This document shows positions 10,360-62,974 of a stretch of DNA of 64,000 nt, piece by piece. A program made the translations under genes and the position numbers. Within the stretch, counting starts at the first letter, position 1, and each line of letters begins with the position of its first letter. Where the stretch lies: IMG/VR virus record IMGVR_UViG_3300030202_003189, positions 62,001 through 126,000 of that record; one strand, written 5' to 3'. Below the pieces are notes generated by a model. It had not been told where the DNA came from, did no database searches, and worked only from the letters and a program-made list of their open reading frames with translations.

Positions 10360-12297
10360 ATGGGACAATTATTAAATTCAGGACAAGTTGGAAACATTGG
10401 AACTAATTCAATGAAACTTATCCGTGAGGATGTAATCAATAAATGGGACAAACTAGGTTTCCTAGATGGTCTTAATGGTTACTCTAAAGACAACGTTGCT
10501 CAATTATTTGAGAACCAAGCTTCTTATCTAATTAACGAGCAAACAACATCAACTGACTCAGGTTCATTCGAAACAGTTGTATTCCCAATCGTAAGGAGAG
10601 TATTCTCTAAACTTTTGGCTAACGATATTGTTTCTGTACAAGCACTTAACTTACCAATTGGTAAATTATTCTACTTTGTACCGGAAATATCTACTAACAG
10701 ACCAGGATTCAACGCTGGTGGATTTGACGCGTCAACTCCTTCATCAGTTGATTTATATGACCAATTCTATGAAGGTAGAACTGGAGATCCAGAAGGAGGA
10801 TTATTTGATGCTTCAAGAGGACTTGCAACTGTAAATATCATTAGACCTTCAGGAGCTGGAGCTGCTGCTAACGGTAACATCGGTTTATACGACTCTTCAG
10901 GAGCGTTCTCTGCAGCAACTGAGGATATGGATACTAGAGATCACAGATACATCGTATTAAAAATCGATTCTGCTACTTTAGTTACTACTGGAACTATGGT
11001 AGGTGCTGATGGTCAATTGGCTGATACTGAAGCTTTCTTAGCTTCATTAAACATCTACTTAACAGGATCTACAACTTCTGCTTCTGCAGCTGATTTAGCG
11101 GCATCTATCGGAACTACTTATGGTATGCCATGTAACGTTTCTGATTCAGTAACTGCAAACACTTACTTAAGAGCTACTGGTATTGTTGGAAATAATGGAG
11201 ATGGTATATTTACACAAGTTGGTAATACTACTGGTGTACTTTCAGGAGGTACTAGACTTAAGTACAGAATGATTACACAAAAGTATGGTCAAGGTATTGT
11301 TGATTCTGCTGGTGATTTATATGTTGAGGTAGACTTCGGTTGTCCAGCATGTCCAGACTGTCAAACTGTTGCTGGTAGAGGTTATGGTAATCCAGGTACT
11401 GCGGCAGGTGTTGGGGCTACTGTACCAAATACTTTTATTACTGCTGATGGTGCGGCTGAGGCTTTAGGTGCGGCTAATAACGGAGCACAAAAACATGGTT
11501 TAGCTGTTGAGTTTAAGAACTACGCAACTTTAGAATTAGAAGACAACATGGCTGAGGTAACTTTCAGATTGGATTCTGTAACTGTAGCGGTAACAGAAAG
11601 AAAATTAAGAGCTACTTGGTCTCCGGAACTTGCACAAGACGTTTCTGCATTCCATAACATTGATGCTGAGGCTGAATTAACAGCTTTATTATCAGAACAA
11701 GTTGCTGCTGAGATTGATAGAGAAATCTTGAAAGACCTTAGAAATGGTGCGGCTTGGTCATTAAGATGGGACGCTAACGGATGGAAAAGATCTAATAACG
11801 CTCAAGGTTACGCAGCTTATACTCAAAAAGATTGGAATCAAACGTTAATTACTACAATTAACCAATTATCTGCACAAATACATAAATCAACACTTAGAGG
11901 TGGTGCTAACTGGATCGTATGTTCAGCTGAAGCTTCTGCTATCTTTGATGATTTAGAGTATTTCCACGTTTCTAACGCGGCTCCAGATCAAGATTCTTAT
12001 AACATGGGTATTGAGAAAGTTGGTTCTTTATCAGGTAGATATACTGTATATAGAGACCCTTACTTCCCAGCTGGTTCAGTTTTAGTTGGACATAAAGGAA
12101 AATCATTACTAGATACTGGTTATGTTTACGCTCCTTATGTACCGTTACAACTTACACCAACTATGTATAACCCTTTCAATTTTGCTCCTATCAAAGGAAT
12201 CATGACTAGATACGCTAAGAAAATGGTCAACAACAGATTCTATGGTAAGATTACTATTGATGGAATACAAACGTTCTCTGTTAATGAGTTAAGATAA
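10360..12297 (+). CDS. gp23: major capsid protein, T4 gp23-like, with large insertion
   Basis: AQLFENQ, PIVRRVF..LLANDIVSVQ, RKLRATWSPELAQD..AFHNIDAEAEL, EIDREI, YAPYVPL, GIMTRYA. Confidence 0.96.
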   Translation: MGQLLNSGQVGNIGTNSMKLIREDVINKWDKLGFLDGLNGYSKDNVAQLFENQASYLINEQTTSTDSGSFETVVFPIVRRVFSKLLANDIVSVQALNLPIGKLFYFVPEISTNRPGFNAGGFDASTPSSVDLYDQFYEGRTGDPEGGLFDASRGLATVNIIRPSGAGAAANGNIGLYDSSGAFSAATEDMDTRDHRYIVLKIDSATLVTTGTMVGADGQLADTEAFLASLNIYLTGSTTSASAADLAASIGTTYGMPCNVSDSVTANTYLRATGIVGNNGDGIFTQVGNTTGVLSGGTRLKYRMITQKYGQGIVDSAGDLYVEVDFGCPACPDCQTVAGRGYGNPGTAAGVGATVPNTFITADGAAEALGAANNGAQKHGLAVEFKNYATLELEDNMAEVTFRLDSVTVAVTERKLRATWSPELAQDVSAFHNIDAEAELTALLSEQVAAEIDREILKDLRNGAAWSLRWDANGWKRSNNAQGYAAYTQKDWNQTLITTINQLSAQIHKSTLRGGANWIVCSAEASAIFDDLEYFHVSNAAPDQDSYNMGIEKVGSLSGRYTVYRDPYFPAGSVLVGHKGKSLLDTGYVYAPYVPLQLTPTMYNPFNFAPIKGIMTRYAKKMVNNRFYGKITIDGIQTFSVNELR

Positions 12298-12320
12298 GTA
12301 TTTCTAAACTTTATATAATG

Positions 12321-13296: not shown

Positions 13297-14976
13297 TTAA
13301 ATAATTACTCTACTTTTTAAGTTATCTGGTAACCCCTGATTGGCGACAATAAATCTTAATTCCTGGTCATAGGTCATAACCCTTTGATTAGAGGTTAGTC
13401 TTAAATCAATATAATAAGTGTTTGGTATTAACCATGACGTGTCAATAATAAAATAGTTACGAGTAGGGGTTCTATTAACATCAGTATAGTCAATAACCGT
13501 GTATTCACTAGTACCATCTTTAATATAGAGTCTATATTTTAATGAATCGATAATCTGAGTCTGGTTAACTGTATATGGTACTCTGGCACTAACCAATACC
13601 TTTCTTAAGTCTCCCCTTTTGATTTTTTCATCACTTTTAATCCCAGAAACTGAAAGTCCATAAGAACGTGGTAAATCAGTGTCCGTACCAATGTTATAAT
13701 ACTCACTTTGTTCCCTAATAGTAATATAATTTGTTACATTGTCGAGATTTTGAGTTATCCCATTTTGTGTAATTGACATACCCGACCATACATCACTATA
13801 CTGGACTAATGGACAAGCACATGTAGATGGAACCGTAAGGTCAATACAATATATACCAGTATTAACATGTTGTACACTAGTGTATGGTGTGTATAATGAA
13901 GCATTTTGGTGATCAGTATTTACAGAAATGAATCTTTGGTATACATCCCCATCAGAATCATATACAACCGCACCAGGTAAGTCATCTAAATTTGTTGGTT
14001 CACTACCCACATTCACATATAAACAAATTCTATTAGTTTTACCCATATAGAATTTCTCTCTATCGTCAATTATGGTGTCCATATACGTGGTTTCGATATA
14101 TGGTTCAAAGAATGTATTTGTGCCCTCATTAAAGAATCCAACATACCTCTTCTCATCAGTTGTTATTGCTTCATATCGTGAGTTAAACGCAATCCCCAAC
14201 CCATAGTTCTTTATTCCAGTAAATGCATCCTCTTGAGCCGCATTTTGTAAAGGTTGGTATTGTCCAGCGGCTAAAGCAACAGGAGTTAAAGAAGTGCCTG
14301 TTAACATATCATTTATTACCGTAGTTACATCCATATCAAGATCTTCATTACCTCTTATAAAGTGTTGAGTTGCAACCATAGTAGTTGCGGTTGTATTGGT
14401 CATGGCTGTATATGGGAATAACGCGTATCTTGTATAATTACTAGCATTTGAACCGCTACTACCATCATAAATTCCACAAGTAGGAATACCTACATTATCA
14501 TATGTACCTCCACTCCACACAGTGTTAGTTTTACCAAAACACCAATTACTAACTCCTTTAGTATCAAATTTAACACCAGCATCCCAATCTTGTCCCATTT
14601 TGAAAGCGACTAAATCGAAAGAGTTTGCACGAGTAGCTGAATTAAATAGGGTATCTTTTCCTAATAAGGCATCATTATTAAAAATAGTATTGGTCATTTT
14701 TAATTTATGGACTGCCTTATGTTGTATTCCACTAGTTGCACTAAAACCACTAAGTGTTATTCTTTTATCTGAAATTCTCGTTTGTATCCCAGAAAGGTCA
14801 AATTTGAAAATATTCCTACTATAGTTGGTGTTTACTACTGTGGTTCCGGTTCCGGCCCCATAGAATAGTTCTGTTACAGGATTAAGAGCGAAATTAGATA
14901 TCGCTTCTGTTGATCCAGTCGAGAATCCTTTCACTATTGTATTACTCTCGGTAAAATATGTTCTATATACTCCCAT
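13297..14976 (-). CDS. putative virion structural protein
   Basis: Beta-rich, Thr/Ser/Gly-rich; preceded by TATTTATA; follows the baseplate spike gene. Confidence 0.6.
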   Translation of the reverse strand: MGVYRTYFTESNTIVKGFSTGSTEAISNFALNPVTELFYGAGTGTTVVNTNYSRNIFKFDLSGIQTRISDKRITLSGFSATSGIQHKAVHKLKMTNTIFNNDALLGKDTLFNSATRANSFDLVAFKMGQDWDAGVKFDTKGVSNWCFGKTNTVWSGGTYDNVGIPTCGIYDGSSGSNASNYTRYALFPYTAMTNTTATTMVATQHFIRGNEDLDMDVTTVINDMLTGTSLTPVALAAGQYQPLQNAAQEDAFTGIKNYGLGIAFNSRYEAITTDEKRYVGFFNEGTNTFFEPYIETTYMDTIIDDREKFYMGKTNRICLYVNVGSEPTNLDDLPGAVVYDSDGDVYQRFISVNTDHQNASLYTPYTSVQHVNTGIYCIDLTVPSTCACPLVQYSDVWSGMSITQNGITQNLDNVTNYITIREQSEYYNIGTDTDLPRSYGLSVSGIKSDEKIKRGDLRKVLVSARVPYTVNQTQIIDSLKYRLYIKDGTSEYTVIDYTDVNRTPTRNYFIIDTSWLIPNTYYIDLRLTSNQRVMTYDQELRFIVANQGLPDNLKSRVII

Positions 14977-19181: not shown

Positions 19182-19970
19182 CTACAATTCTTTTACCTCA
19201 ATACTCCTATCTTCAGTAAAGAAATATTCTTTTTTTGCCGTTTCTAACCAGAAAGGACCCGCATCATCACCAATTAGGTGAGCTGGGTGGTTTTTATAAT
19301 TAAAAAATAGAGAACCAACTCTCATATTCACGTGTTTATATCCAACTTTCGGTATTGTCATAATTCTAGCATCCATGAATACTGACCTTAATAAAAATTC
19401 ATAAACAAAGGTTAATTTAATATTATTCTTTAATCCCCCTATTTCCTTAAATAAATCCACTCTCATTACCATCCCGTCAATATTAAAGTTAGGGTAGTTT
19501 AATAACGAATCTAAGTCAAGAACCCCAATCTCCTCGGAAAAGTTCAACGCCCAAACAGGTTCGTTTGTCCATCCTATAAATTTATTTTTAGGGTCAACGT
19601 TAGTTATTAAAGGTAAAAAGATATCTACGTCTTCATAGAATCCCATGTAATCTTTAGCTTTTCTTATCCATAGGTTAGATAATTCATCATCTACCTCTAA
19701 GATACAGAAAAATTCTGTGCCACAATTATCCACCGCAAAGTTTATTTGTGATGCGAAATTATAAGACCCAGTAGTGTTAACTAAAATGTTATAATCTAAA
19801 TCTCCAAACTCTGATTTTTTTATTTCAGACTCTAATTCTGGGGTACAAACTACTACAAGTTTCTCAGCGTGAGTTTGTTGATCTTTCACACTACCTAAAG
19901 CAGTGTTCAAAAGTTCCAACTCTTTATTTTCGTTGGTGTGTATTGGTATAATAATAGTAATATCTTTCAT
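19182..19970 (-). CDS. glycosyltransferase, GT-A / GT2-like
   Basis: ITIIIPI, QINFAV, FCILEVDDEL (DxD-type), LFKEIGGL, YEFLLR. Confidence 0.75.
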   Translation of the reverse strand: MKDITIIIPIHTNENKELELLNTALGSVKDQQTHAEKLVVVCTPELESEIKKSEFGDLDYNILVNTTGSYNFASQINFAVDNCGTEFFCILEVDDELSNLWIRKAKDYMGFYEDVDIFLPLITNVDPKNKFIGWTNEPVWALNFSEEIGVLDLDSLLNYPNFNIDGMVMRVDLFKEIGGLKNNIKLTFVYEFLLRSVFMDARIMTIPKVGYKHVNMRVGSLFFNYKNHPAHLIGDDAGPFWLETAKKEYFFTEDRSIEVKEL

Positions 19971-19971
19971 T

Positions 19972-21066
19972 TTAATTCATTTGTTTTGATGCTTCAAGAG
20001 CTTGTACCTTTTCATTCTGTTCTTGATTATTTAGTGCTATAACTAGTTCTTCTATCCTTTCCTCAAATAGTTCATTATAGAAAGAGGCTACTTCTCCAGC
20101 TTCTTTCGCTTCGCTAAACTCGGATGAGGTTTTTTCCATTTCCTCATATAACTCTTGTGGGACAGAATCTTCTAACCAGTTTTTCATCACACTTGCTGCG
20201 GTGTCAACTAACGTTAATTTATTGTTAGTCCAAATTCCATTCTTTTCGGTTAACCAATTAGGGGTTAAATCAGGAACTAAACCAATAACTGGAGTTCCAG
20301 ACTTCATAGACTCAATCGGGAAAGTACCAAACCCAGCAATAGGGTCTATCCAAACTGAAAGAGCACATTCCCTTAATGCTTCAGCGAATTCTGGTCTAGT
20401 TAAACCTCTCATATCTCTAAACGTAATCCATTTTAGGAATGGGTGTTTAATGTAGAAACTTTTAATAAAATTAGCGGTCTCTCTAGACTCACGACAATGT
20501 ATAGCAATAAAAGGTTTTTTTGGTTCCTTACTTTTTACAAAATAATCAGGTATTGTTGGACTAACAATTGAGGTTTTAATATTTGGAAATAATGAGTTGA
20601 CGTAGTTCTCTTGAGATTTAGTTGTTGTAAGACATCTTCTAACAGCGAATTGTCCCCAAGTTATCCCCGGTTTCATTAATTCAAATATGTAATCGTAAGC
20701 TTGAACAAACATGATTTTCTCGCAGTTTGCATCTTTTAATTGATCTAAAACTCCACCATAAATCTCTGGGAGAATTAGAAAATCTTGTGGTCCGATTAGT
20801 GCTCCTTGATTACTTTCTCCACTAACAGCCTCATGAGGAATTTTTTCATATCCATCACCTAACCAGGTTGGTTTAACAAAATCATCCTTCTCTGTTAGTA
20901 TTATTGCGTTATATCCTAGTTCGCGTAGAATCTTAACGTGTTCATATATAGTCGATACGGCAGCCATTGCCGATCCTTTAGAATCCATACAGAAAAAATA
21001 AATTTTATTTGTTTTGGTTTCTAGGGTTTTAATTGCGCTTTTTACTTTTTGTATTATTTCACTCAT
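19972..21066 (-). CDS. glycosyltransferase, GT-B / GT4-like
   Basis: DFLILPE and GFGTFPIESMKSGTPVIG (E-x7-E-like region). Confidence 0.75.
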   Translation of the reverse strand: MSEIIQKVKSAIKTLETKTNKIYFFCMDSKGSAMAAVSTIYEHVKILRELGYNAIILTEKDDFVKPTWLGDGYEKIPHEAVSGESNQGALIGPQDFLILPEIYGGVLDQLKDANCEKIMFVQAYDYIFELMKPGITWGQFAVRRCLTTTKSQENYVNSLFPNIKTSIVSPTIPDYFVKSKEPKKPFIAIHCRESRETANFIKSFYIKHPFLKWITFRDMRGLTRPEFAEALRECALSVWIDPIAGFGTFPIESMKSGTPVIGLVPDLTPNWLTEKNGIWTNNKLTLVDTAASVMKNWLEDSVPQELYEEMEKTSSEFSEAKEAGEVASFYNELFEERIEELVIALNNQEQNEKVQALEASKQMN

Positions 21067-21706: not shown

Positions 21707-22372
21707 TTACATTCCATTTAATAACTCAAAAACCGCGTCTATTGCTTCATGACGATGGTTATCAGTTAATAATGATTTATATACGAATTTTGACGTAGAT
21801 ATTTTTGGTACCTCATGTATCGCAGAGTAATTTTTATCTTTAAGATCAATCTGTTGGTTATCCCCAGTAAATATCATAGTGGAATTCTTACCCAACCTAC
21901 TTAATACCATAGATAACTGAGATTTAGTTAAGTTTTGAAATTCGTCGATAATACACACACTGTCCTCAAAAGTTCTTCCTCTAAAGTGAGCCAACGAAAC
22001 CAACTCAATCTGCTCCTCCCTTTCCATTTTATCAAGAATAGGTGGTTTATTATAAACCTTTCTCATATTCGATCTAATCGGTACCAACCAAGGTTCCATT
22101 TTTTCTCTTTCAGAACCAGGTAAAAATCCATTATCTTCTGTAGAGACCGTTGGTCTAGTGATAATGATTTTATTACATTGTTTCTTAAAGAATTGGTCAA
22201 GTGCGATTTGTACCGCTAATAATGTCTTACCACTACCCGGTTTTCCAACAATAAAATTAAAAGGGTGTTTCAGTATTTCTGTTTTGGCCTTTTTTTGTTC
22301 CGGTGAAAGAGAAAGTGAAAATCTCACAGATCCCTTTGGTGGAGTTTTATCTTTATTATTTTTTGGTGACAT
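21707..22372 (-). CDS. phoH: PhoH-family ATPase
   Basis: GKPGSGKT, ITRP, GFLPG..EKM.PW, FRGRTF, IIDEFQN, SRLG, GD..QIDL. Confidence 0.93.
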   Translation of the reverse strand: MSPKNNKDKTPPKGSVRFSLSLSPEQKKAKTEILKHPFNFIVGKPGSGKTLLAVQIALDQFFKKQCNKIIITRPTVSTEDNGFLPGSEREKMEPWLVPIRSNMRKVYNKPPILDKMEREEQIELVSLAHFRGRTFEDSVCIIDEFQNLTKSQLSMVLSRLGKNSTMIFTGDNQQIDLKDKNYSAIHEVPKISTSKFVYKSLLTDNHRHEAIDAVFELLNGM

Positions 22373-23378
22373 CTAGTATTTTTTTTATGTTATCTATTAT
22401 TATTTTAGAAGGTCTTCCATTTTTCATGTAGAAATCCTTCATTCTTGTACTCTTAGTATTAGTTGCCCAGTTTATGGGGTTGATAATATTTTTATATCTT
22501 ACTCCGTAATCCGCTGACTCTACTTCTGTCCACTCAATATTATTTCTCATAACTATACATTTTTTAGAAAAAAATGGACAAGTCTTCATTAAACCTCCTG
22601 AGTCTGTAATGATAAATTTACAGCTTGATAATGCGTCTATCATTTCACTATATTTTGCGGGTGGTTTTATGGTTATATTTTTTGGAAGGACGATGTTGTT
22701 ACCTTCAATAAAGGATTCTGTACTGTGATGTAAGTAAAAGTCTATAGGTTTATTGTATTTTTCACAGAAAGAAAGAATTTTAGAAAAACTTTCAACATTC
22801 TGATTCTCTTTTCTATGAATTGTCATAACAGGAGGACCAACAAAAGTAATATCTTTATCGTAATGTTTATTAAGTAATTCGTATTCTAAATCACCAGACA
22901 CTATTTCATTATTAAAAAAGTCCTGTATGTATCCTGTTTCTCTAGGTGTGAATTGAATCTGTGATGCCAAGTCTGCGACTATCCTGTTTAATTCCTCCGG
23001 AACTTTAATATCGTTACATCTTCGACCGGCTTCTACATGACCAAAAGGGATTTTGTGTTTATAACAAACTAAAGAGGAAGATAAAGTGCTATTTGTATCT
23101 CCGTATATTAAAACAAAATCAGGTTTTTCTTTTTTTAATATTTCACTAAACCTTTCCATAGTTTGTGATATGAAAGATACTTCATCATTATTAGATATTT
23201 GTAAATCGTGATCTATAATAAGGGAAAACTCTTCTATAAAGTAATCAGAAACATTTTCACTATAGTGTTGGTTGGTGTCAACAATGATATGGTTAATCTT
23301 ATTTTCGTTACAATAATCAAAAATAGGTTTTACTTTTACGTATTGAGGTCTAGTTCCTATTATGCTAAGAATCTTCAT
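22356..23378 (-). CDS. UDP-N-acetylhexosamine 2-epimerase, non-hydrolysing (WecB/WbpI-like)
   Basis: GTRPQYVK, QHY, YGDTNST, HVEAG, PEELNR, TIHR.EN, ITDSGG. Confidence 0.88.
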   Translation of the reverse strand: MKILSIIGTRPQYVKVKPIFDYCNENKINHIIVDTNQHYSENVSDYFIEEFSLIIDHDLQISNNDEVSFISQTMERFSEILKKEKPDFVLIYGDTNSTLSSSLVCYKHKIPFGHVEAGRRCNDIKVPEELNRIVADLASQIQFTPRETGYIQDFFNNEIVSGDLEYELLNKHYDKDITFVGPPVMTIHRKENQNVESFSKILSFCEKYNKPIDFYLHHSTESFIEGNNIVLPKNITIKPPAKYSEMIDALSSCKFIITDSGGLMKTCPFFSKKCIVMRNNIEWTEVESADYGVRYKNIINPINWATNTKSTRMKDFYMKNGRPSKIIIDNIKKILDVTKK

Positions 23379-24177
23379 TTTTTCTCATTTTGTTTCTTTC
23401 GCTTATTGTTGCTCCTAATACTTCACAAATACTACCATTTTCTAACATTGTGTTATAAAGGGCTTGGGTGTCTTTGGGGAAACACGCACCTCCATAACTT
23501 AATCTTCCGTCTGGACCCGGTACGTTTGTGTGCATCTCATTTACCCATCCATTTCTAAGTATCAGATCTTTTACCACGTCATAACTAGAATCTAGTTTAC
23601 CACATAAATCATACATTTCATTAAAGAATTGTACCTTAACCGAATAAAAGGAATTTGCAAATATCTTCATAAGTTCTGATTCTGTAGAGGTACAAATAGA
23701 GATTTTAACATCCGGAAAACCAGACTTATATAGTTCTATAATATCCTCCAACTGTTCTTCATTTTCAGTATAACCTAATACAATATGTTTTTGTTGTGCG
23801 AAATCTTTTTCACTAGTTCTGGCGGTTAGAAATTCAGGGTTGTGTACGATATTAAGATTGTAAAGGTGAGAAATATTCAAACAAGTATTAGGTTGTGTTG
23901 TGCTTTTTATTACGATAGTTCCCCTATACTCTTTTTTATTTAGTCTATTTAATATTTCATGTATTGCACTATAGTCATATCCTCTTAATTCATTCGAAAA
24001 AAGTGTTGGTAGACATAAGAACATTATATCAGACTCAAGAGTAGAGTCAAAAGAATCAAAACTTTTATATTTGTCATAACTTCTGGTTTCATATCCTTTA
24101 TTCCTAAACCAGGAGTAAACGGCGTTACCAACAAACCCTCTACCAATAACGCTAATTATTTTCTTAGTACTTTTCAT
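23365..24177 (-). CDS. UDP-glucose/UDP-GlcNAc 6-dehydrogenase family, short form (270 aa)
   Basis: IGRGFVG, CLPT, IKST, HNPEFL, SELMK..ANSF, YGGACFPKD. Start set at MKSTKK (24177). Confidence 0.85.
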   Translation of the reverse strand: MKSTKKIISVIGRGFVGNAVYSWFRNKGYETRSYDKYKSFDSFDSTLESDIMFLCLPTLFSNELRGYDYSAIHEILNRLNKKEYRGTIVIKSTTQPNTCLNISHLYNLNIVHNPEFLTARTSEKDFAQQKHIVLGYTENEEQLEDIIELYKSGFPDVKISICTSTESELMKIFANSFYSVKVQFFNEMYDLCGKLDSSYDVVKDLILRNGWVNEMHTNVPGPDGRLSYGGACFPKDTQALYNTMLENGSICEVLGATISERNKMRKNEDS

Positions 24178-28466: not shown

Positions 28467-28467
28467 A

Positions 28468-29067: not shown

Positions 29068-29591
29068 TTTCTTATTCTTATTAATCTCGCAGGGACTCCT
29101 GCGATTACACTATATTCTGGGAAGTCTTTGGTTACTACCGCTCCAGCACCAACTTGGGTTCCTTTTTTAATTGTAACCCCTGGCATAATTACAGAGTTGA
29201 CCCCTAAATCGGAGTCGTCCTCAATAATAACTGGTTTGAATTCTAATTCTTCGTGTAGTATCGGTTGGTTTATATTTGTGTCTTTATGATGACTTGTGAG
29301 TATTTTAACTCCTGGTCCTATACCTATATTTTTACCTATTTTAATACCACCAGCAGAATGAAAGAAACATTGTTGACCAATCCAGGTTCCCTCTTCTATT
29401 ATCATCTCATTTTTATAGTAACCTTTTAGAATTGTATTGTGTCCGATATAGACGTTATCGTGTATGGAAATGTTTTCAGGATGAAATAGGAGTACACCGT
29501 CCTCTAATATAGTTTTTTCACCTAGTCTCTTAAGGGAGTCTTTATTATAAAAACCTTTTTCATTTAATCTACCGTTTCCGTGACTTTCCAT
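29064..29591 (-). CDS. left-handed beta-helix acyltransferase
   Basis: Hexapeptide repeats, [15 protein letters not shown]. Confidence 0.85.
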
Positions 29592-51586: not shown

Positions 51587-52792
51587 ATGGCATTTACAAC
51601 ATTAGTTGATTATTCAAGGCAATTAACACAAGCTCCAGACACAACCGCTATTTTTTCTGGTGATACAGAAATACTGGGTAGTCTTACGTTAGGGTCAATT
51701 TATTCTAATGGACTATCGGATTATTCCAAATTATATTTTAGTTCCAGTACACTTACAACATCACCTGAGATTAAATACAACCCACTACTAAAGAATTGGT
51801 TATTTACTATGCGTGACCCTGCTGACGCTACCGCAACAGAACACCAACTTAACAGATTAAAATTTACTTTGAACACCGCTGGTAAAAATGGAGAGTTTGG
51901 GTTTTATGGACAACAATCATTTTTTAGATATACTTCGGATGATATGGATGGACTACAAAGTAATGTTCTTCACAATCCAGCGACCGTTATGATAATTGGA
52001 AGTGGAACCACAAGTGCGAGTACGGCATTCACAGTTTCAAATTGGAACTCCTCAACAGGAATAGGAATGACGGGACTTACTATTGATGATGGAATGAATG
52101 TTAGAATTGGAGATAGACGACCTTACGCCAATGCAGATTCTAATACATGTCAGGTTTTTCTTGGTCCCGGAGGTATACTGAACAACCAGGAAGATTATGA
52201 AGTATTATATATCGGAGGAGAGGGTCGTGTTGGTATAGATTTATCTAGACGGGACGTAAAAATGAATATAGACTATGATTATGATAGTTCTTGGATATAT
52301 GGTCTTAAACCGGTGCAATTTGAATTTAAGAAGTCTCCGGGTCGTATTCAGTGGGGGTTTATTGCTGAAGATGCTGCAGAAGTTAAAAAAGATTTCGCTA
52401 AATGGGACTCTGATGGGTCATTAAGAGGGGTTAAACATGAGAGGTTAGTTTCTGTAGTACTTAAAGAATTAATTGAATTAAGAAAAAAGGTCGATCCCTC
52501 TTTTAGAAAAACGCATGAAGAAGATAAAGTAAAAATTATTTCAGATGATTATGAAGTAATTCATGATGGTACAATAATTGCTCGTGGAGGTAAAGATATT
52601 AAATTAACTATATCTGATTCATTATCTGGAATGGTAAGAATAAAATCATTGGCTAATGTTACTGTACGTTCTAATCGATTGATTGATGAAAAGTGGGGTC
52701 AGATGGAGTTAGAAGATGGTAGTAGTGTTAGTTTATTGTGTCACGACAAATTTATATACATACTTTCCTCAGACGGGGATAAGCTTAAATAA
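51587..52792 (+). CDS. fibre-type protein with peptidase S74 intramolecular chaperone domain
   Basis: SRRDVKMNI, LKPVQFEFK, WGFIAED, GVKHERLVSVVLKELIEL. Confidence 0.7.
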   Translation: MAFTTLVDYSRQLTQAPDTTAIFSGDTEILGSLTLGSIYSNGLSDYSKLYFSSSTLTTSPEIKYNPLLKNWLFTMRDPADATATEHQLNRLKFTLNTAGKNGEFGFYGQQSFFRYTSDDMDGLQSNVLHNPATVMIIGSGTTSASTAFTVSNWNSSTGIGMTGLTIDDGMNVRIGDRRPYANADSNTCQVFLGPGGILNNQEDYEVLYIGGEGRVGIDLSRRDVKMNIDYDYDSSWIYGLKPVQFEFKKSPGRIQWGFIAEDAAEVKKDFAKWDSDGSLRGVKHERLVSVVLKELIELRKKVDPSFRKTHEEDKVKIISDDYEVIHDGTIIARGGKDIKLTISDSLSGMVRIKSLANVTVRSNRLIDEKWGQMELEDGSSVSLLCHDKFIYILSSDGDKLK

Positions 52793-56653: not shown

Positions 56654-59470
56654 ATGGCAAATCAAGTAGTAGTATCACCAGGAGTATATACATCAGAAAA
56701 AGATCTTTCTTTTGTCGCATCCAGTGTAGGGATAACAAGATTAGGGGTATCAGCAGAGACACTAAAAGGACCGGCTAACCAACCTATTTTCGTACAAGAC
56801 TATGACACATACCAAACTTATTTTGGTGGACAAGACCCATCTGTATGGACAGTAGGGAGTACTTTAATACCTAAGTATGAAGGAACATATATCGCTAGAT
56901 CTTATCTAAGTGAATCAAATAATCTTTGGATGACAAGAACTCTAGGTCTTAGTGGATATGACGCAACCGAGGCTTTAGTTATAAATGTAGGTGAGGGTAA
57001 TATGGACGCAACTCAAGCGACACAACAAACAAATACTGCTGGAGGTATCCAATCGGATAAAAGATTTTCAGCTATGACAGCCTGTGTTATTAGAGTAAGA
57101 AAAAAACAAGGTGTTACATTTACTCAACCAAATTTTGCTGTACAAATATTAAGAGTAGGGACAGCACCAGGAATGATAGAGGTTGCGGATGGACAATGGG
57201 TACCTAATGGAATTAATGGAGGAAGTTCAGCTACAGGTATTGCGAGTACTACTAATATACAACCACCAGCTAACGCACAAAATGCAGTTTGGAGTACAGC
57301 TGCGGATGACTTCGTTATACAAACTATGAGGTTAGGTGGTGTAATAAGAGATACTTATGTTGTTAGTTTCAACCCAAACAGTAATAACTACATAACAAAA
57401 GTTCTAGGAACTAATCCATACTATGACTCTACAAATAATAGTGAGGCTAGAATATATGTTGAACAATTCTACCCTAAAGCGATACAACAGTTAGGTAAAG
57501 AATGGGGTGGTACAGCAGGAAACAGTTATCTTGATGGTTTACCACACATGACTTGGTATAACGTACCTTCAGGATGGAGTAATTATACTGACACTTGGCA
57601 ACCAATTGCAACAACAGACGGACCAACTACTCCATGGATTTATTCTGAAGTTAGAGGTCTTGACGTAGAAAAATTATTTAGACTTATTTCTATCGGTGAT
57701 GGTAATGCCGCAAATAAAAACATTAAAACATCTTTCCTTAATTTAGATATTGATAATAAAACTTTTGATATTGCAATTAGATCATATGACGATACCGACG
57801 CTAAACAATCAGTATTAGAGAGTTTCAAGAATTGTAGTATGAACCCAGTTAGTCAAAATTATATTGGTAAAAAAATTGGTACATTAAACGGAGAATATGC
57901 TTTAAGATCAAGATATGTAATGGTTGAAATTGATGACAACGCACCAATAGATGCGTTACCATCAGGATATAAAGGATACCCAACTACAGATGGACCTAAT
58001 ATGAGTGGGGTTACTAATTTCCAAGGGTCTACTTTTAGTACGTTTGAAGATGCACTTCATTCACGTATCCAACCAGATGTGTATTATAATTTAAGTTATG
58101 ATACAGTTAATGACAATGTTAGAAAAACTTATCTAGGTCTTTCTGATAAGATGGGATATGACCAAAACTTATTTAATTACATGGGGTGTGCTACTGTTAG
58201 AGGTACTACTTGTGCTACAGCTTGGACAGGACACACATACGGTTTCCACTTAGATACAAGAGTTTCTGGGTCAACTTTCTTAGGTGATACAAATTTATCA
58301 GATGGAAAACAATGGTTCTCAGGTTCAGTTGGGACATTCCCATTTTATGTTAATTCCGTTGACTATGTTAACGATCCATACTATGGACCTGGATCAGAGG
58401 CACTAGCGGCTAATTCAAAAAACGCATATTACCAGAAGAAATATAGAAAATTTACCGTGGCATTTTATGGTGGTTTTGATGGTTGGGATGTGAGTAGAGC
58501 TAGTAGAACAAATACAGATAGTTGGAGAGAGAATCAAGCGGCGGGATATAATTTAGGGTACGGTAGTGGTACTACAGGACCATATCTTGGAGCTTATACT
58601 TTTAATAAGAACACTGACTGGTATGCTTATTATAACGCAATACAAAAGTTTGCTAATCCAGAAGAGGTTGATATAAATCTTTTTGCAACACCTGGTATCG
58701 ACTACACTAATAATTTAACATTAGTTAATGATACTATTGAGATGGTTGAAGATGATAGAGCTGATTCACTATATATCCTTACTTCAGAGAATTATAAGGA
58801 CCAAACAGTGGATAATGCGGTAGACGCTTTAGAAGACTCAAGTATCTCTAGTAATTATGTTGCGACTTACTGGCCATGGATACAATTTAACGATGTTGAA
58901 AACAACGTAAGGATATACATTCCACCAACTAATGAAGTTTTAAGAAATATGGCGATTACAGATAATGTATCCTTCCCATGGTTCGCAACTGCTGGTTACA
59001 ATAGAGGAATAATAAAAGCTAATAAGGTAAGAATAAATCTAACACAAGATAATAGAGACGACCTATATGAAGCTAGACTAAACCCAATTGCGACATTTAC
59101 AGCGACTGGACCGGTTATTTGGGGTAATAAAACATTACAAACAGCAATGTCGGCACTTGATAGGATTAATGTTAGAAGATTACTTCTTAGAGCTAGAAAA
59201 TTAGTTTCAGCAGTGGCGGTTAGACTAGTATTTGAACAAAATGATGAAATAGTAAGACAAGAATTCTTAAGTTTAGTAAATCCAATTCTAGAAGATATTA
59301 GAAGAGATAGAGGATTAACAGACTTTAAGGTTGTTCTTTCTAATGACCCAGAAGAAATTGATCAAAACAAGTTGACAGGTAAGATTTATATTAAACCAAC
59401 TAGATCTTTAGAGTTTATCGAAATAGAATTTAATATCACACCAACAGCAACAAGTTTTGACGATATATAA
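56654..59470 (+). CDS. gp18: tail sheath protein 1, T4 gp18-like
   Basis: SPGVYTSEKD, KGP, YWPW, PWFATAGYNRG, RDDLY..RLNPI, WGNKTLQ...SALDRINVRRL, IKPTRSLEFI. Confidence 0.93.
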   Translation: MANQVVVSPGVYTSEKDLSFVASSVGITRLGVSAETLKGPANQPIFVQDYDTYQTYFGGQDPSVWTVGSTLIPKYEGTYIARSYLSESNNLWMTRTLGLSGYDATEALVINVGEGNMDATQATQQTNTAGGIQSDKRFSAMTACVIRVRKKQGVTFTQPNFAVQILRVGTAPGMIEVADGQWVPNGINGGSSATGIASTTNIQPPANAQNAVWSTAADDFVIQTMRLGGVIRDTYVVSFNPNSNNYITKVLGTNPYYDSTNNSEARIYVEQFYPKAIQQLGKEWGGTAGNSYLDGLPHMTWYNVPSGWSNYTDTWQPIATTDGPTTPWIYSEVRGLDVEKLFRLISIGDGNAANKNIKTSFLNLDIDNKTFDIAIRSYDDTDAKQSVLESFKNCSMNPVSQNYIGKKIGTLNGEYALRSRYVMVEIDDNAPIDALPSGYKGYPTTDGPNMSGVTNFQGSTFSTFEDALHSRIQPDVYYNLSYDTVNDNVRKTYLGLSDKMGYDQNLFNYMGCATVRGTTCATAWTGHTYGFHLDTRVSGSTFLGDTNLSDGKQWFSGSVGTFPFYVNSVDYVNDPYYGPGSEALAANSKNAYYQKKYRKFTVAFYGGFDGWDVSRASRTNTDSWRENQAAGYNLGYGSGTTGPYLGAYTFNKNTDWYAYYNAIQKFANPEEVDINLFATPGIDYTNNLTLVNDTIEMVEDDRADSLYILTSENYKDQTVDNAVDALEDSSISSNYVATYWPWIQFNDVENNVRIYIPPTNEVLRNMAITDNVSFPWFATAGYNRGIIKANKVRINLTQDNRDDLYEARLNPIATFTATGPVIWGNKTLQTAMSALDRINVRRLLLRARKLVSAVAVRLVFEQNDEIVRQEFLSLVNPILEDIRRDRGLTDFKVVLSNDPEEIDQNKLTGKIYIKPTRSLEFIEIEFNITPTATSFDDI

Positions 59471-59491: not shown

Positions 59492-62400
59492 ATGGCAGAT
59501 CAGTCACCATTATCACCAGGAGTTTATGTATCAGAAAGAGAACTAAGCTTTAACGCACCAAGTATTGGTGCAACAACGTTGGCCACAGTTGGAGAAACCC
59601 TTAAGGGTCCAGCGCAACAACCAATATTCATTGAAGATTATAACGAATATAAAACATATTTTGGTGGGTTAGATACTACGGTTTTTTCTGGTAGTACTAG
59701 ATTAAAATACGGACAACAATATATTGCTAAGAATTGGTTGGCGGAATCAAACTCTATGTGGGCCGTACGTTCATTAGGATACTCTGGATATGATGCGGGA
59801 ACCGCTTGGAATATTTCATTAAACTACGTACCAACCACAAATAATGTGTTTAGATCATTTGGTGGGGGTGGTACTGACGGACACTATAACGGACTAACCC
59901 AAAGAGAATTAGGAGGAACAGGTATACCATATATGGCACCAGACGGTACAATAAGTGCAATGACACTATATAAACCAACTCAATACTCTTTCCCAAACAA
60001 TGCGGGAGCCACATCAGTACAGCCAGGTATGTATAGTGGAGGTACATGGGGATATAACGCAGATGCTGACGGAGGTTCGGCTATAAATGGTACACAATAT
60101 ACTAATGCAGGTGGAGGGGCCAACTTTGGTGCAAACTACCAATCAGCAATAGAGTTAGCTGTAATATTTTCTGCTACTACATATGGAGGGGCTGGTAAAT
60201 TAGTCGTAACAGGTAGTACAGGTGGGAATTCTTTTGCGGGACCATCATCAGAGGCAGCAGGACTTCCTTGGGTTTCAGAATTAACAACAACATCTTATCC
60301 TCTTTGTTTATTAAGTGCAACAACACTAGTAATAACTACGAACTCTTCAGTAGGGGGTGCTGATCCAACAGCATTTACCGCAGGAGGTTCTGAAGGATTT
60401 GAGAGTCCTAGAATAACAACAGGAAGTAACGCAACTACTTTCCCAACTATTCAGTGGAAACCAGCAATTTCAGTACATGATAATGGAGTTAACGCGTCTA
60501 ATGTATCACCAGCAAATATAATACACGCTGGAATGGGGTCAAGAGATGTCAATCCATTAGGTTATCCTGTAACAGGACACACTTTCCAACTAAATTGGAG
60601 GTACGGTAATTATATAGGTGCACATAGTGGAGGGACAACTGGATGGACAGCACAAACAACAGGGACCGTGTATACATGGTCGGCGGCAACTCAAGAAATG
60701 GTGGTCGGAACTCTAAGAAGTAGAGCAAAATATGCGGGTAATACTTATAGTACAAACACTGCGTATAATGGAGGTGCTTGGGGAGTCACAGACTACCAAT
60801 CTCCATCTTTTGGTAATAAGAGTGAATGTGATGGAACAGTTACTACGTGTCCTGAAAAACCATTTAGGACCATCAATACAACAAACTATAAAGAAGATTT
60901 TTATATATCTGGGTATACTAATGGTGCTTCTGTAAATTCACAATTCCTTTATAAGGTAAGTTTAGACCCTAACTCTCAGTGTTATATCACAAAAGTATTG
61001 GGTACAAAAAAACATAATAATTCTCGTCATTTATGGGTTGAAGACATTTATCCTAACACATTACTTAATTTAGCTTCTTCTGCTGTAACATTCTCAAACA
61101 TTAATCTAAATAAGGCAGACACATATAGAAATTATACAGAAACATGGCAACCATTAGGCGCTTTAGAAGGGCCAACAACTCCGTGGATTGTGTCTGAACT
61201 AATGGGTAGTACTCTACATAAGTTATTTAGAGTTATTTTAATACCAGATGGTAACGATGCAAATGAGTTGGTTAAAATATCTATACAAGATGTCGATGTC
61301 TTTACTAAAACTTTTACTCTTACTGTTAGAGAATTTAACGATAGCGATGCGTCCCAAAGAATATTAGAAGGATATACTAACTGTAGTATGAACCCAACAA
61401 GTCAAAACTACATTGGGAAGAAAATAGGAACGGAGAATGGGGAATACCCTGTTAGGTCACGATATATTATGTTGGAAATTGATGAAAACGCACCCATAAA
61501 CGCTCTTCCAAGCGGATTCCAAGGAATCGTCGTTAGAAGCTATAGTGGGTCAACTCATAGTAATGAAGTTTATCAAGACCCACCTGCACAAACAGAAATT
61601 GCAAATGATAGTGGATGGTATGGTAATGAATCACCAAAACCATTTTATAATTTAACTTATAATACAACATCTGACGATATTAAGAAAACTTACTTAGGGT
61701 GGTCCACTAAAAAAGGTATTGACCAAAATTATTTTAACTATAGAGGTCTTGAAACTCTAACAACTACGGCACCATATAAATGTGGTGCTAATGGAACATT
61801 ATGGACTGGAAGAACTAAAGGATTCCACTTTGATAAAAGAGTATCCGGATTAACAACAAGTGACGTACTTCAGTATGAGGTAGGGGCTTATAGTTTTTAC
61901 ACTAGTGGTAGTACAGGAACATTAGTAGGTGATAGTGGAAATTATTATCAAAATAAAGATTATTTGAAATTTACAGTTATTCCTTATGGTGGTTTTGATG
62001 GTTGGGATGAATATAGGATAACAAGAACAAATGCTGACACATATATAATAGGAGGGACAGACTACGGCACATTCTGGTATAATCAGAGTTTTACAACATC
62101 CACTTGTCAAGTAACTGATTATTATGCTTACTATGATGCCATGAGGAAACTAGCCAATCCAGAGGCGACACCAAGTAGCGTATTTACAACACCAGGTATA
62201 GATTATACAAATAATTTAACATTGGTTAATCGAGCAAAAGAAATGATAGAAAATGATAAAGGAGACTCGATTTATATTGTAACTTCAGATAACCCAAGAA
62301 ATCAAACAGTAGATGAAGCTGTAGATAATTTAGAAAACGCAGCATTAAATAGTAGTTATATGGCTACGTATTGGCCTTGGGTAAGGTATAACGATACTGA

Positions 62401-62974
62401 AAATAACGTAAGAATATATATTCCACCTACAGCTAATGTTGTTAGAAATTTAGCATTAACTGATAATGTATCATTCCCGTGGTTCGCAACAGCTGGTTAT
62501 AATAGAGGTAAACTGGATGTTGATAGGGCACAAACAAAACTAACTCAGATTAACAGAGACGACCTTTATGAGGCAAGAATAAACCCAATAGCCACATTTA
62601 ATGGTGCGGGGGTTATTATATGGGGAAATAAAACTTTACAAACAACACAATCAGCTTTAGATAGAATTAATGTAAGACGACTTATGTTAGACCTTAAAAC
62701 TAAAGTTAAAGATATAGGGTTACAATTATTATTTGAACAGAACGACGCTATTGTAAGACAACAATTCTTATCTTTAATTAATCCAGTTCTAGAAGAAGTA
62801 AGGGCAAATAGAGGATTAACAGATTTCAGGGTAGAACTAAATTCAGATGTTAACGAACTAGACACCAACTCTATGACAGGTAAAATATTTGTTAAACCAA
62901 CTAGAACACTTGAATTTATAGAAGTTGAGTTTAACATAACACCATCGAGTACATCATTCACTGACTTAACATAA
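59492..62974 (+). CDS. gp18: tail sheath protein 2, T4 gp18-like paralogue
   Basis: Same N- and C-terminal sheath motifs as sheath 1, with a longer distal insertion. Confidence 0.92.
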   Translation: MADQSPLSPGVYVSERELSFNAPSIGATTLATVGETLKGPAQQPIFIEDYNEYKTYFGGLDTTVFSGSTRLKYGQQYIAKNWLAESNSMWAVRSLGYSGYDAGTAWNISLNYVPTTNNVFRSFGGGGTDGHYNGLTQRELGGTGIPYMAPDGTISAMTLYKPTQYSFPNNAGATSVQPGMYSGGTWGYNADADGGSAINGTQYTNAGGGANFGANYQSAIELAVIFSATTYGGAGKLVVTGSTGGNSFAGPSSEAAGLPWVSELTTTSYPLCLLSATTLVITTNSSVGGADPTAFTAGGSEGFESPRITTGSNATTFPTIQWKPAISVHDNGVNASNVSPANIIHAGMGSRDVNPLGYPVTGHTFQLNWRYGNYIGAHSGGTTGWTAQTTGTVYTWSAATQEMVVGTLRSRAKYAGNTYSTNTAYNGGAWGVTDYQSPSFGNKSECDGTVTTCPEKPFRTINTTNYKEDFYISGYTNGASVNSQFLYKVSLDPNSQCYITKVLGTKKHNNSRHLWVEDIYPNTLLNLASSAVTFSNINLNKADTYRNYTETWQPLGALEGPTTPWIVSELMGSTLHKLFRVILIPDGNDANELVKISIQDVDVFTKTFTLTVREFNDSDASQRILEGYTNCSMNPTSQNYIGKKIGTENGEYPVRSRYIMLEIDENAPINALPSGFQGIVVRSYSGSTHSNEVYQDPPAQTEIANDSGWYGNESPKPFYNLTYNTTSDDIKKTYLGWSTKKGIDQNYFNYRGLETLTTTAPYKCGANGTLWTGRTKGFHFDKRVSGLTTSDVLQYEVGAYSFYTSGSTGTLVGDSGNYYQNKDYLKFTVIPYGGFDGWDEYRITRTNADTYIIGGTDYGTFWYNQSFTTSTCQVTDYYAYYDAMRKLANPEATPSSVFTTPGIDYTNNLTLVNRAKEMIENDKGDSIYIVTSDNPRNQTVDEAVDNLENAALNSSYMATYWPWVRYNDTENNVRIYIPPTANVVRNLALTDNVSFPWFATAGYNRGKLDVDRAQTKLTQINRDDLYEARINPIATFNGAGVIIWGNKTLQTTQSALDRINVRRLMLDLKTKVKDIGLQLLFEQNDAIVRQQFLSLINPVLEEVRANRGLTDFRVELNSDVNELDTNSMTGKIFVKPTRTLEFIEVEFNITPSSTSFTDLT

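What the first reader, a model, noticed from the sequence alone, without database searches (positions are those of the whole stretch)
10360..62974. Recurrent [S/T]-[G/A]-x-[T/S] motif across unrelated virion proteins: candidate glycosylation sequon
Seen in the translations. Sheath 2: FSGST, ISAMT, YSGGT, FSATT, VTGST, LSATT, VTGHT, HSGGTTGWTAQT, WSAAT, ISGYT, YSGST, WTGRT, VSGLT. Sheath 1: FSAMT, MSGVT, WTGHT, VSGST. 37404 protein: YSAQT, LSGNT, FTGHS, VSGYT, NTGWT, FTGDT, CSGGT, ATGFT, CTGNT, VSGTT, FSATT, ITGNT, WSGVT. 13297 protein: WSGGT, YTAMT, LTGTS, WSGMS. Fibre: LSACT, LSGCT, TSAMT, ATGAT. 51587 protein: FSGDT, MTGLT. MCP insertion: FSAAT, LTGST, LSGGT. The motif is usually preceded by a hydrophobic residue, clusters in variable insertions and looks rare in the polymerase, helicase, portal and enzymes. 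Inference: a convergently gained acceptor site for the phage's own soluble glycosyltransferases, giving a glycan-coated virion. It differs from the Bacteroidota D-[S/T]-[A/I/L/M/T/V] sequon.
Basis: partly seen in the sequence, partly recalled or inferred. Interest (0 to 1): 0.85.

Follow-up and report, generated by a model that had tools for sequence, protein, structure and literature searches.

The report
Recurrent Ser/Thr-Gly/Ala-x-Thr motif on virion proteins
An uncultured marine T4-like phage lineage keeps a four-residue motif, hydrophobic-[S/T]-[G/A]-x-T, far above chance in the lineage-specific inserted domains of several unrelated virion proteins; it looks like a recognition site for a modifying enzyme, most plausibly the phage's own soluble glycosyltransferases, but no modification has been shown.

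Summary
In six virion proteins [ST][GA]xT occurs 57 times against 14.5 expected, and 37 against 4.7 with a hydrophobic residue before it. In a scan of about 2000 comparable patterns it ranks first. It is at chance in the other 49 ORFs and in the 41610 fibre.

Changing any one position's residue class, or the spacing, removes most or all of the excess.

Relatives keep the motif at the same alignment columns in the sheath and the 37404 protein. In the capsid insertion it turns over between positions while its density is maintained.

T4, a cyanophage, the two nearest cultured relatives and an uncultured relative without two of the transferases lack the enrichment.

The motif-rich families show no detectable homology to each other.

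Four conserved soluble glycosyltransferase genes and a hypervariable sugar island (here an acetamidino-sugar pathway) are core to the same lineage and sit next to the richest protein.

The glycosylation reading is the best explanation (about 0.4). It is unproven: structure models were too poor to judge exposure, and the transferases could act on DNA. A lineage-specific structural idiom is the main rival.

The parts
10360..12297 (+). Gp23-type major capsid protein (645 aa) with a ~290-aa insertion (about aa 113-400). Its four motif sites are FSAAT 184, LTGST 235, VTANT 265 and LSGGT 295.
   Evidence: Pfam Gp23 and PHROG major head protein. Sites listed. 80 homologues give 482 vs 174 expected, and 341 vs 58.8 with a hydrophobic -1 residue. 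Insertion 4.5x, core 0.4x.
13297..14976 (-). Phage-specific 559-aa protein of unknown role. The Atlas gives only a possible CBM96-like beta-helix lead. It has 9 motif sites and a TATTTATA element 13 nt upstream.
   Evidence: 9 vs 2.6 expected, and 6 vs 0.9 with hydrophobic -1. 27 homologues at 30-35% identity give 168 vs 39. Atlas; upstream element.
19182..19970 (-). GT2-family glycosyltransferase (GT2a), conserved across the lineage.
   Evidence: Pfam Glycos_transf_2. Syntenic at about 40% identity in ~25 loci. No transmembrane segment.
19972..21066 (-). Conserved 364-aa protein next to GT2a; a probable further glycosyltransferase.
   Evidence: phmmer hit to PDB 8xsg, 'putative glycosyltransferase', E 6.8e-6. 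Synteny.
22356..33210 (-). Nucleotide-sugar island. It holds a 2-epimerase, a sugar dehydrogenase, two hexapeptide acetyltransferases, a GFO/IDH/MocA oxidoreductase, a DegT aminotransferase, a WbuX amidotransferase, HisF2 and HisH, an epimerase/dehydratase, a 448-aa unknown, a methyltransferase and a GT2-like 250-aa protein.
   Evidence: Pfam. In NCBIfam, WbuX and the AglZ/HisF2 acetamidino protein score above their cut-offs. The island ranges from 0 to 12 kb and differs in content among related loci.
33207..34781 (-). Two-domain GT2 glycosyltransferase (GT2x2), conserved across the lineage.
   Evidence: Pfam Glyco_tranf_2_5 plus Glycos_transf_2. The best solved relative is chondroitin synthase K4CP, E 8e-11. 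30 related loci.
36094..37290 (-). GT4-like glycosyltransferase, first gene of the minus-strand operon and divergent from the 37404 gene.
   Evidence: Weak Pfam Glyco_trans_1_4 and Glyco_transf_4 hits. About 50% identical in syntenic loci. Intergenic region.
37404..41174 (+). 1256-aa multi-domain beta-sandwich virion-type protein; the motif-richest protein, with 24 sites.
   Evidence: 24 vs 7.5, and 16 vs 2.6 with hydrophobic -1. Homologues at 33-91% identity all score z 4-10. The motif is retained at the same columns in 218 of 274 cases. Weak CBM-like jelly-roll fold matches.
51587..52792 (+). 401-aa fibre-like protein with an S74 chaperone domain, just after the gp13 gene; 5 motif sites.
   Evidence: Pfam Peptidase_S74 and PHROG tail fibre. 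5 vs 1.6; T-ending form 5 vs 0.7, p 0.0005.
56654..59470 (+). Tail sheath paralogue 1 (938 aa); 10 motif sites.
   Evidence: PHROG and Pfam sheath. 10 vs 3.6. WTGHT 525 and VSGST 538 are homologous to sheath 2 sites 772 and 785.
59492..62974 (+). Tail sheath paralogue 2 (1160 aa) with a ~710-aa insertion; 18 motif sites, 17 of them in the insertion.
   Evidence: 18 vs 7.2. Insertion 17 vs 3.5, core 1 vs 1.0. Retention 162 of 192 in homologues at 58-88% identity, with S/T and G/A swaps.

Best explanation
Hydrophobic-[S/T]-[G/A]-x-T is a short linear motif. Selection maintains it in lineage-specific inserted domains of several unrelated virion proteins of one large uncultured T4-like lineage. 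These domains are inferred to face outward.

The most likely cause is a trans-acting enzyme, encoded by the lineage, that recognises the motif. The best candidate is the conserved set of soluble glycosyltransferases: GT4, the two-domain GT2, GT2a and a GT-like neighbour.

Proposed course of events:
1. The minus-strand operon makes activated sugars. In this phage these would be a di-N-acetylated hexuronic-type sugar carrying an acetamidino group.
2. One transferase puts the first sugar on the Ser/Thr at motif position 0, in the cytoplasm.
3. The small residue at +1 and the Thr at +3 act as recognition elements.
4. The K4CP-like two-domain enzyme may extend the chain.
5. Capsid, sheath and accessory proteins then carry a glycan whose chemistry varies between relatives with the sugar island.

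Shown: the statistics, specificity, conservation, turnover and lineage restriction of the motif, and the gene content and synteny.

Inferred: that any sugar is attached, which residue is the acceptor, and which enzyme starts.
For: - Enrichment is far beyond composition: 57 vs 14.5, and 37 vs 4.7 with hydrophobic -1. The motif ranks first among about 2000 patterns.
- Specificity is sequon-like. SGxT 5.9x, TGxT 4.4x, SAxT 5.1x and TAxT 3.3x, whereas changing one position's residue class gives 0.6-1.4x and changing the spacing gives 1.3-1.6x.
- Codons at the motif are diverse, so the constraint is on the protein.
- The motif occurs in five families with no detectable homology. BLAST finds none among them; a profile comparison was run only for the sheath and 37404 families.
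- It is conserved as a unit, with S/T and G/A swaps and a free x position. S/T class conservation is 0.91 inside the motif and 0.65-0.67 outside.
- In the capsid insertion 36 different columns carry it and only 2 do so in at least half the sequences. Sites at rare columns alone (48) exceed the total expected by chance (34.8).
- It is lineage-specific. It is absent from T4, S-SM1, Flavobacterium phage immuto, Microcystis phage Mel-JY01 and LR756508. In the first four the aromatic -1 form is 0.6-1.06x.
- GT4, GT2x2 and GT2a are core and syntenic across about 30 loci. The 37404 homologue sits upstream of GT4 on the opposite strand and is always motif-rich.
- No membrane proteins lie in the cluster.
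- GT2x2 and GT2a have no match in any cultured phage.
Against: - There is no direct evidence of modification.
- Structure models could not place the motif. Of its sites, 72-79% lie in pLDDT<50 segments.
- Most sites in the sheath and the 37404 protein are positionally conserved, as a structural feature would be.
- A related fibre fragment carries 5-6 sites per 68-residue repeat, which looks structural.
- The transferase operon lacks the TATTTAT[AT] element seen before structural genes. It has a sigma-70-like site instead.
- dUTPase-like, PolB-exonuclease, NT5C and PhoH genes are interleaved with the transferases, so DNA or nucleotides could be their target.
- The co-occurrence of transferases and motif is close to a single evolutionary event.
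- No transferase shows a protein-binding accessory domain.
- The motif is not depleted in non-virion ORFs of this window.
Confidence: 0.4

Rival explanations
1. The motif is a structural idiom: a local beta-structure element, such as a strand end followed by a small residue and a beta-branched Thr. The inserted domains of this lineage happen to use it. Either they descend from one ancient domain that is now unrecognisable, or the same packing solution was found repeatedly. No enzyme reads it.
For: - Positional conservation is high in the sheath and the 37404 protein: 162/192 and 218/274.
- A hydrophobic -1, small +1 and Thr +3 would lie on one face of a strand.
- In the few confidently modelled sites the motif tends to sit at a strand C-terminus.
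- A related fibre fragment repeats it 5-6 times per 68-residue unit.
- Other phages' fibrous proteins show a mild generic excess of [ST][GA]x[ST], 1.4-1.6x.
Against: - A purely physical preference should be universal. Yet T4 structural proteins are at 0.9x and the aromatic -1 form is 0.6-1.06x in all four control phages.
- No homology is detectable among the families.
- G and A interchange at one column, and Ala holds position +1 in 36% of sites (25 of 69). That argues against a Gly-dependent tight turn.
- Motif positions turn over in the capsid insertion while density is kept.
- The modelled sites show no single secondary-structure context.
Confidence: 0.3
2. The motif is read by some other trans-acting factor of the phage or host, such as a chaperone, a kinase, or an acyl- or methyl-transferase. 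The glycosyltransferases and sugar island serve another target: phage DNA hypermodification or the host envelope.
For: - The transferases are interleaved with dUTPase/dCTP-deaminase-like, PolB-exonuclease, NT5C and PhoH genes in every locus.
- Phage transferases related to LPS enzymes are known to put mono- to trisaccharides on DNA (bioRxiv 10.1101/2023.12.21.572611).
- Hypervariable sugar content also fits a restriction arms race.
- The operon's upstream region differs from that of structural genes.
Against: - No cytosine methyltransferase, 5-methylpyrimidine dioxygenase or hydroxymethylase was found among the scanned ORFs of the cluster.
- No alternative modifying enzyme conserved with the motif was identified.
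- No flippase, polymerase or initiating phosphoglycosyltransferase is present for envelope work.
Confidence: 0.18
3. Chance, amino-acid composition, or a DNA-level bias produces the pattern.
Against: - Local shuffles keep z at 6.8.
- The motif ranks first in an unbiased scan.
- The S/T/G/A-richest protein, the fibre, is not enriched.
- Codons are diverse.
- The result is replicated in hundreds of diverged homologues.
Confidence: 0.01

Closest known systems
Mycobacteriophage virion glycosylation (Freeman et al. 2023, Cell Host Microbe; known to me through its description in PMC12619734)
   Same: The phage encodes glycosyltransferases, and capsid and tail proteins would carry the glycan in a cytoplasmically assembled virion.
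   Different: In mycobacteriophages the glycans sit on the C-termini of the capsid and tail-tube subunits. Here the candidate sites are internal, in inserted domains, follow a defined four-residue pattern, and occur in the capsid protein, two sheath paralogues and three accessory proteins. The phage also carries a full sugar-nucleotide pathway. Nothing has been demonstrated here.
Autonomous capsid glycosylation of chloroviruses and other giant viruses (PMC4691112, PMC9614988; listed)
   Same: Virus-encoded soluble transferases and sugar pathways would act on the major capsid protein at atypical sites, independently of host secretory machinery.
   Different: Those are eukaryotic viruses, and the capsid glycans of chloroviruses are N-linked. 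Here Ser/Thr is the only possible acceptor and the N-x-S/T pattern is at chance.
Bacteroidota general O-glycosylation sequon D-[S/T]-[A/I/L/V/M/T]
   Same: A short Ser/Thr-centred pattern with a small or aliphatic residue after the acceptor.
   Different: That sequon is at chance in these proteins (20 vs 20.9). Asp at -1 is not favoured; a hydrophobic residue is. To my knowledge the Bacteroidota system acts on proteins exported beyond the cytoplasm, and virions are assembled in the cytoplasm.
Cytoplasmic O-glycosylation of flagellins and of autotransporter beta-helices (from my own knowledge)
   Same: Soluble transferases modify many Ser/Thr residues on the surface-exposed parts of structural proteins before assembly, often with rare sugars from a variable island. 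Hydrophobic residues near the sites have been noted for flagellins.
   Different: Those systems have no strict sequon, and no homology to their enzymes was found here.
Phage DNA sugar hypermodification clusters (Pyle et al., bioRxiv 10.1101/2023.12.21.572611)
   Same: Phage transferases related to LPS enzymes, diverse glycans, and neighbourhoods that can include structural genes.
   Different: Those clusters depend on a cytosine methyltransferase and a 5-methylpyrimidine dioxygenase. Neither was found in this cluster. They also say nothing about a protein motif.
Pseudomonas aeruginosa O5 Wbp pathway for UDP-2,3-diacetamido-2,3-dideoxy-mannuronic acid and its acetamidino form (from my own knowledge)
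   Same: The same enzyme families are present: dehydrogenase, GFO/IDH/MocA oxidoreductase, DegT aminotransferase, hexapeptide acetyltransferase, 2-epimerase, WbuX-type amidotransferase, and HisH/HisF2.
   Different: Only WbuX, HisF2 and HisH reach NCBIfam cut-offs. The dehydrogenase is short (313 aa). No Wzx, Wzy, WaaL or initiating transferase is present.

Membership tests
Virus-encoded virion protein glycosylation | The virus encodes its own glycosyltransferases. | tested here: met
   GT2, two-domain GT2, GT4-like and a GT-like protein.
Virus-encoded virion protein glycosylation | A glycan is covalently attached to virion proteins. | not testable with these tools
   Needs mass spectrometry or glycan staining of virions or of co-expressed proteins.
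Virus-encoded virion protein glycosylation | The machinery is cytoplasmic and independent of a lipid carrier. | tested here: met
   No multi-pass membrane protein lies between 19182 and 37290 by hydropathy. No flippase, polymerase or ligase family was hit. This covers the window only.
Virus-encoded virion protein glycosylation | Candidate acceptor sites are solvent-exposed on the assembled particle. | tested here: inconclusive
   Sites lie in the capsid and sheath insertions, which are external in T4 by my own knowledge. However, 72-79% of sites fall in model segments with pLDDT<50.
Mycobacteriophage-type glycosylation | The glycan sits on C-terminal tails of the capsid and tail-tube subunits. 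| tested here: not met
   Candidate sites are internal. The tube-like ORF 62980-63762 has 1 site.
Bacteroidota O-glycosylation sequon | D-[S/T]-[A/I/L/V/M/T] is enriched or used. | tested here: not met
   20 observed vs 20.9 expected in the six proteins.
N-x-S/T N-glycosylation | The N-x-S/T sequon is enriched. | tested here: not met
   68 vs 61.0.
Phage DNA sugar hypermodification cluster | A cytosine methyltransferase plus 5-methylpyrimidine dioxygenase, or a hydroxymethylase, accompanies the transferases. | tested here: not met
   No such Pfam family among the ORFs from 12350 to 37290. The rest of the 231-kb genome was not examined.
Wbp-type diacetamido-uronic acid / acetamidino sugar pathway | All enzyme steps are present. 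| tested here: inconclusive
   All families are present at Pfam level. WbuX, AglZ/HisF2 and HisH score above NCBIfam cut-offs; the others score below equivalog cut-offs.
Tight beta-turn requiring glycine | Gly is obligatory at the turn position. | tested here: not met
   Ala holds position +1 in 25 of 69 sites and swaps with Gly within columns.

The most novel reading that the evidence does not exclude
A large, widespread, uncultured lineage of aquatic T4-like phages coats its capsid, sheath and accessory proteins with glycans. Its own cytoplasmic transferases add them at a defined tetrapeptide sequon, hydrophobic-[S/T]-[G/A]-x-T. The glycan chemistry diversifies through a hypervariable sugar island, as O-antigens do. 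This would be the first protein glycosylation sequon defined for a bacteriophage.
Probability: 0.4. Interest if true: 0.9.

Novelty: new variant of a known kind. Interest (0 to 1): 0.7.

Why it matters
If the motif is a glycosylation site, sequence alone would predict which virion surfaces of a very common group of aquatic phages are sugar-coated. It would also predict how the coat differs between relatives.

That bears on several questions: virion stability, adsorption, recognition by grazers or host defences, and reading viral metagenomes. It would also give glyco-engineering a compact cytoplasmic O-glycosylation tag with its enzymes.

Even if no sugar is involved, one four-residue motif gained independently by unrelated virion proteins of a single lineage points to an unknown factor that reads it.

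Tried and rejected
- **Composition and regional richness:** rejected by whole-protein and 20/40-residue local shuffles.
- **Post-hoc motif choice:** addressed by an unbiased scan of about 2000 patterns and by the same scan on four control phages.
- **DNA-level cause:** rejected, because codons at the motif are diverse.
- **Shared domain:** BLAST among the proteins and a profile comparison of the sheath and 37404 families found nothing.
- **A hoped-for natural experiment:** distant large sheaths P0054-P0060 differ in motif count. This failed because their sites are unconserved, lack the hydrophobic -1, and lie in S/G-rich loops.
- **Solved structures:** nothing found for the inserted domains or for the repeat fibre L055.
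- **Structure prediction:** the sheath 2 and 37404 models had mean pLDDT 63 and 55, with the motif regions mostly under 50, so exposure could not be measured. Fold searches returned only sheath cores and weak CBM-like jelly rolls.
- **T4 late promoter TATAAATA:** at chance frequency. Its reverse-oriented form turned out to mark gene starts.
- **Literature:** searches found no described phage sequon of this form.
Full report
**What the window is.** The 64-kb window comes from a 231-kb IMG/VR contig (IMGVR_UViG_3300030202_003189). It belongs to a distant T4-like myovirus with about 34% G+C.
- Plus-strand genes include the portal, prohead protease, a Gp23-type capsid protein with a large insertion, a family-B polymerase, gp13, and two tandem sheath paralogues of 938 and 1160 aa.
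- The nearest cultured phages are Microcystis phage Mel-JY01 and Flavobacterium phage immuto, at only about 41-43% capsid identity.
- The 37404 protein and the two-domain GT2 have no match in any cultured phage.

- Every cited instance is present.
- Whole-protein shuffles give 24 vs 7.5 (37404 protein), 18 vs 7.2 (sheath 2), 10 vs 3.6 (sheath 1), 9 vs 2.6 (13297 protein) and 5 vs 1.6 (51587 protein).
[ST][GA].[ST] ranked first (79 vs 34.8, z 7.9). The same motif with an aromatic residue at -1 ranked second. Shuffling within 20-residue windows left z at 6.8.
- The other 49 ORFs are near expectation. The polymerase, helicase and portal have none.
- The 41610 fibre, the richest in S/T/G/A, is not enriched (9 vs 9.4).

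**Shape of the motif.** The profile is hydrophobic (46 of 69 sites against a 33% background; Trp 6.4-fold), then S>T, G>A, any residue, T>>S.
- In 28 diverged target proteins SGxT, TGxT, SAxT and TAxT are 3.3-5.9-fold enriched.
- Replacing the class at position 0, +1 or +3 gives 0.6-1.4-fold. Changing the spacing gives 1.3-1.6-fold.
- For the window's six proteins the sharp form gives 57 vs 14.5, and with hydrophobic -1 it gives 37 vs 4.7.
- Codons at the motif are as diverse as elsewhere, so the constraint is on the protein.

**Where it sits.**
- Sheath 2: insertion 17 vs 3.5, core 1 vs 1.0.
- Capsid protein (40 non-redundant homologues): insertion 157 vs 34.8, conserved core 6 vs 15.0.
- Three large ORFs just beyond the window are not enriched. 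Nor are the portal, protease, scaffold-like and tube-like ORFs.

**Relatives.**
- Sheath 2 homologues at 44-88% identity, and 37404 homologues down to 33%, keep the enrichment.
- They keep it at the same alignment columns: 162 of 192 for sheath 2 and 218 of 274 for the 37404 family. S/T and G/A swaps occur and x is free. S/T class conservation is 0.91 inside the motif and 0.65-0.67 outside.
- 80 capsid homologues at about 52-56% identity, out of at least 598 found, give 482 vs 174, and 341 vs 58.8 with hydrophobic -1. 27 homologues of the 13297 protein give 168 vs 39. Portals and 237 other ORFs in the same loci are at or below expectation.
- In the capsid insertion the sites turn over. Two sites common elsewhere are missing from the window's protein, and its own four sites are not shared. 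36 columns carry a motif somewhere, but only 2 do so in at least half the sequences. Sites at rare columns alone (48) exceed the chance total of 34.8.

**Is it generic to phage structural proteins?** No.
- T4 structural proteins are at 0.9-fold, Mel-JY01 at 1.2, immuto at 1.4 and cyanophage S-SM1 at 1.6. In the last two it sits among generic S/T-G/A clustering patterns.
- The aromatic -1 form is 0.6-1.06-fold in all four.
- Distant large sheaths with other insertions are not enriched.
- The 484-kb uncultured phage LR756508 shares part of the sheath insertion, but neither GT2x2 nor GT2a finds a match in it. It has no enrichment and no motif at the aligned sites.

**Are the proteins related?** Apart from the two sheaths, BLAST finds nothing. 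A profile comparison of the sheath and 37404 families gives 0.1% probability. The motif therefore recurs across at least five families.

**The sugar genes.** The minus-strand block 19182-37290 encodes:
- GT2a;
- a GT-like protein (PDB 8xsg, E 7e-6);
- a 12-kb nucleotide-sugar island;
- a two-domain GT2 whose best solved relative is chondroitin synthase K4CP;
- a GT4-like enzyme.

The island holds the enzyme families of the diacetamido-uronic acid route. It also holds a WbuX amidotransferase and an AglZ/HisF2 acetamidino protein, both above NCBIfam cut-offs. No protein in the block has more than one hydrophobic segment.

About 30 related loci share one backbone. The 37404 homologue lies upstream on the opposite strand, followed by GT4, PolB-exonuclease, dUTPase-like, GT2x2, a variable island of 0-12 kb, PhoH, NT5C, the GT-like protein, GT2a and, further on, the 13297 homologue. 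The 37404 homologues in those loci are all motif-rich.

**Structure.** The models were poor: mean pLDDT 63 for sheath 2 and 55 for the 37404 protein. Motif sites fall in segments under 50 in 13 of 18 and 19 of 24 cases, against 41-43% of other Ser/Thr residues. I therefore could not measure exposure. The few confident sites show no single context, though several sit at a strand C-terminus.

**Interpretation.** A motif that is sharply defined, lineage-restricted, shared by unrelated proteins and renewed at new positions is best explained by something in that lineage that reads it. The conserved soluble transferases are the obvious candidates, so I place the glycosylation sequon first, at about 0.4.

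The main rival is a lineage-specific structural idiom (0.3). High positional conservation and a repeat fibre with 5-6 sites per 68 residues favour it. Its absence from other phages, the Gly/Ala interchange and the turnover count against it.

A third possibility (0.18) is that another factor reads the motif while the transferases serve DNA. They are interleaved with nucleotide-metabolism genes. Their operon also lacks the TATTTAT[AT] element found 4-22 nt before many structural genes. However, no methyltransferase, dioxygenase or hydroxymethylase was found in the cluster. Compare Pyle et al..

**Comparison with known systems.** Phage virion glycosylation is known in mycobacteriophages, at C-terminal tails (described in PMC12619734), and in giant viruses. 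The Bacteroidota sequon and N-x-S/T are at chance here. A defined internal tetrapeptide across capsid, sheath and accessory proteins would be a new variant of that kind.

Noticed in passing
window 56654-59470 and 59492-62974: Two tandem tail-sheath paralogues (938 and 1160 aa; 50% identical over the C-terminal 744 residues). Both are kept in relatives down to about 60% identity. Sheath 2 carries an extra ~350-residue insertion. Two sheath genes in one myovirus is unusual.
   Followed up: partly
window 22356-33210; loci L037, L038, L045-L073: The sugar-nucleotide island beside the two-domain GT2 ranges from 0 to 12 kb and differs in gene content between related phages, while the flanking transferases stay fixed. 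This resembles O-antigen locus variation.
   Followed up: partly
window 241-248, 2090-2097, 5654-5661, 14989-14996 (-), 18462-18469 (-), 41187-41194, 47916-47923, 50434-50441, 54690-54697, 56604-56611: TATTTAT[AT], read in the direction of the gene, lies 4-22 nt (43 nt for sheath 1) upstream of many structural gene starts. It is a candidate late-promoter element and is the reverse complement of the T4 late box. It is absent upstream of the GT4 operon, where TTGATT-N17-TATTAT is found.
   Followed up: partly
window 3442-5079, 6377-7588, 7590-8366; capsid insertion near aa 310-330: Three ORFs between the portal and the scaffold-like gene are very cysteine-rich (26, 13 and 12 Cys; 3-5%). The capsid insertion holds a C-P-x-C-x-x-C cluster conserved across the lineage. 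This suggests metal binding or disulfides in head proteins.
   Followed up: no
window 12350-13261 (-): A PLP-dependent enzyme of the cysteine synthase / threonine dehydratase family (PALP, E 2e-65) lies between the capsid gene and the 13297 gene.
   Followed up: no
window 23365-24306 (-): The nucleotide-sugar dehydrogenase ORF is only 313 aa. It starts at GTG, overlaps the upstream acetyltransferase ORF by 143 nt, and matches only positions 75-297 of the 413-position family model. It therefore seems to lack the C-terminal domain. The arrangement is shared by locus L045.
   Followed up: no
window 41610-44501; L037 14367-15581; L038 13767-18389: The fibre/tailspike gene after the 37404 gene is 963 aa here, but 404 aa and 1540 aa in two close relatives. 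It looks like a swapped host-range cassette. It is not enriched in the motif.
   Followed up: partly
L055 2-1534 (-), L067 1-660 (-): In more distant relatives, a fibre next to the 37404 homologue is built of ~68-residue repeats. Each repeat holds 5-6 motif copies (V-TGDT, L-TATT, I-SATT, V-TGFT and others). It starts with the common ISQLP tail-fibre N-terminus.
   Followed up: partly
L093-L095, L100, L149 (516-aa homologues of window 14998-15903): Homologues of the 14998 ORF in other clades are longer and motif-enriched (43 vs 16 over 17 proteins). The window's 301-aa version has none.
   Followed up: no
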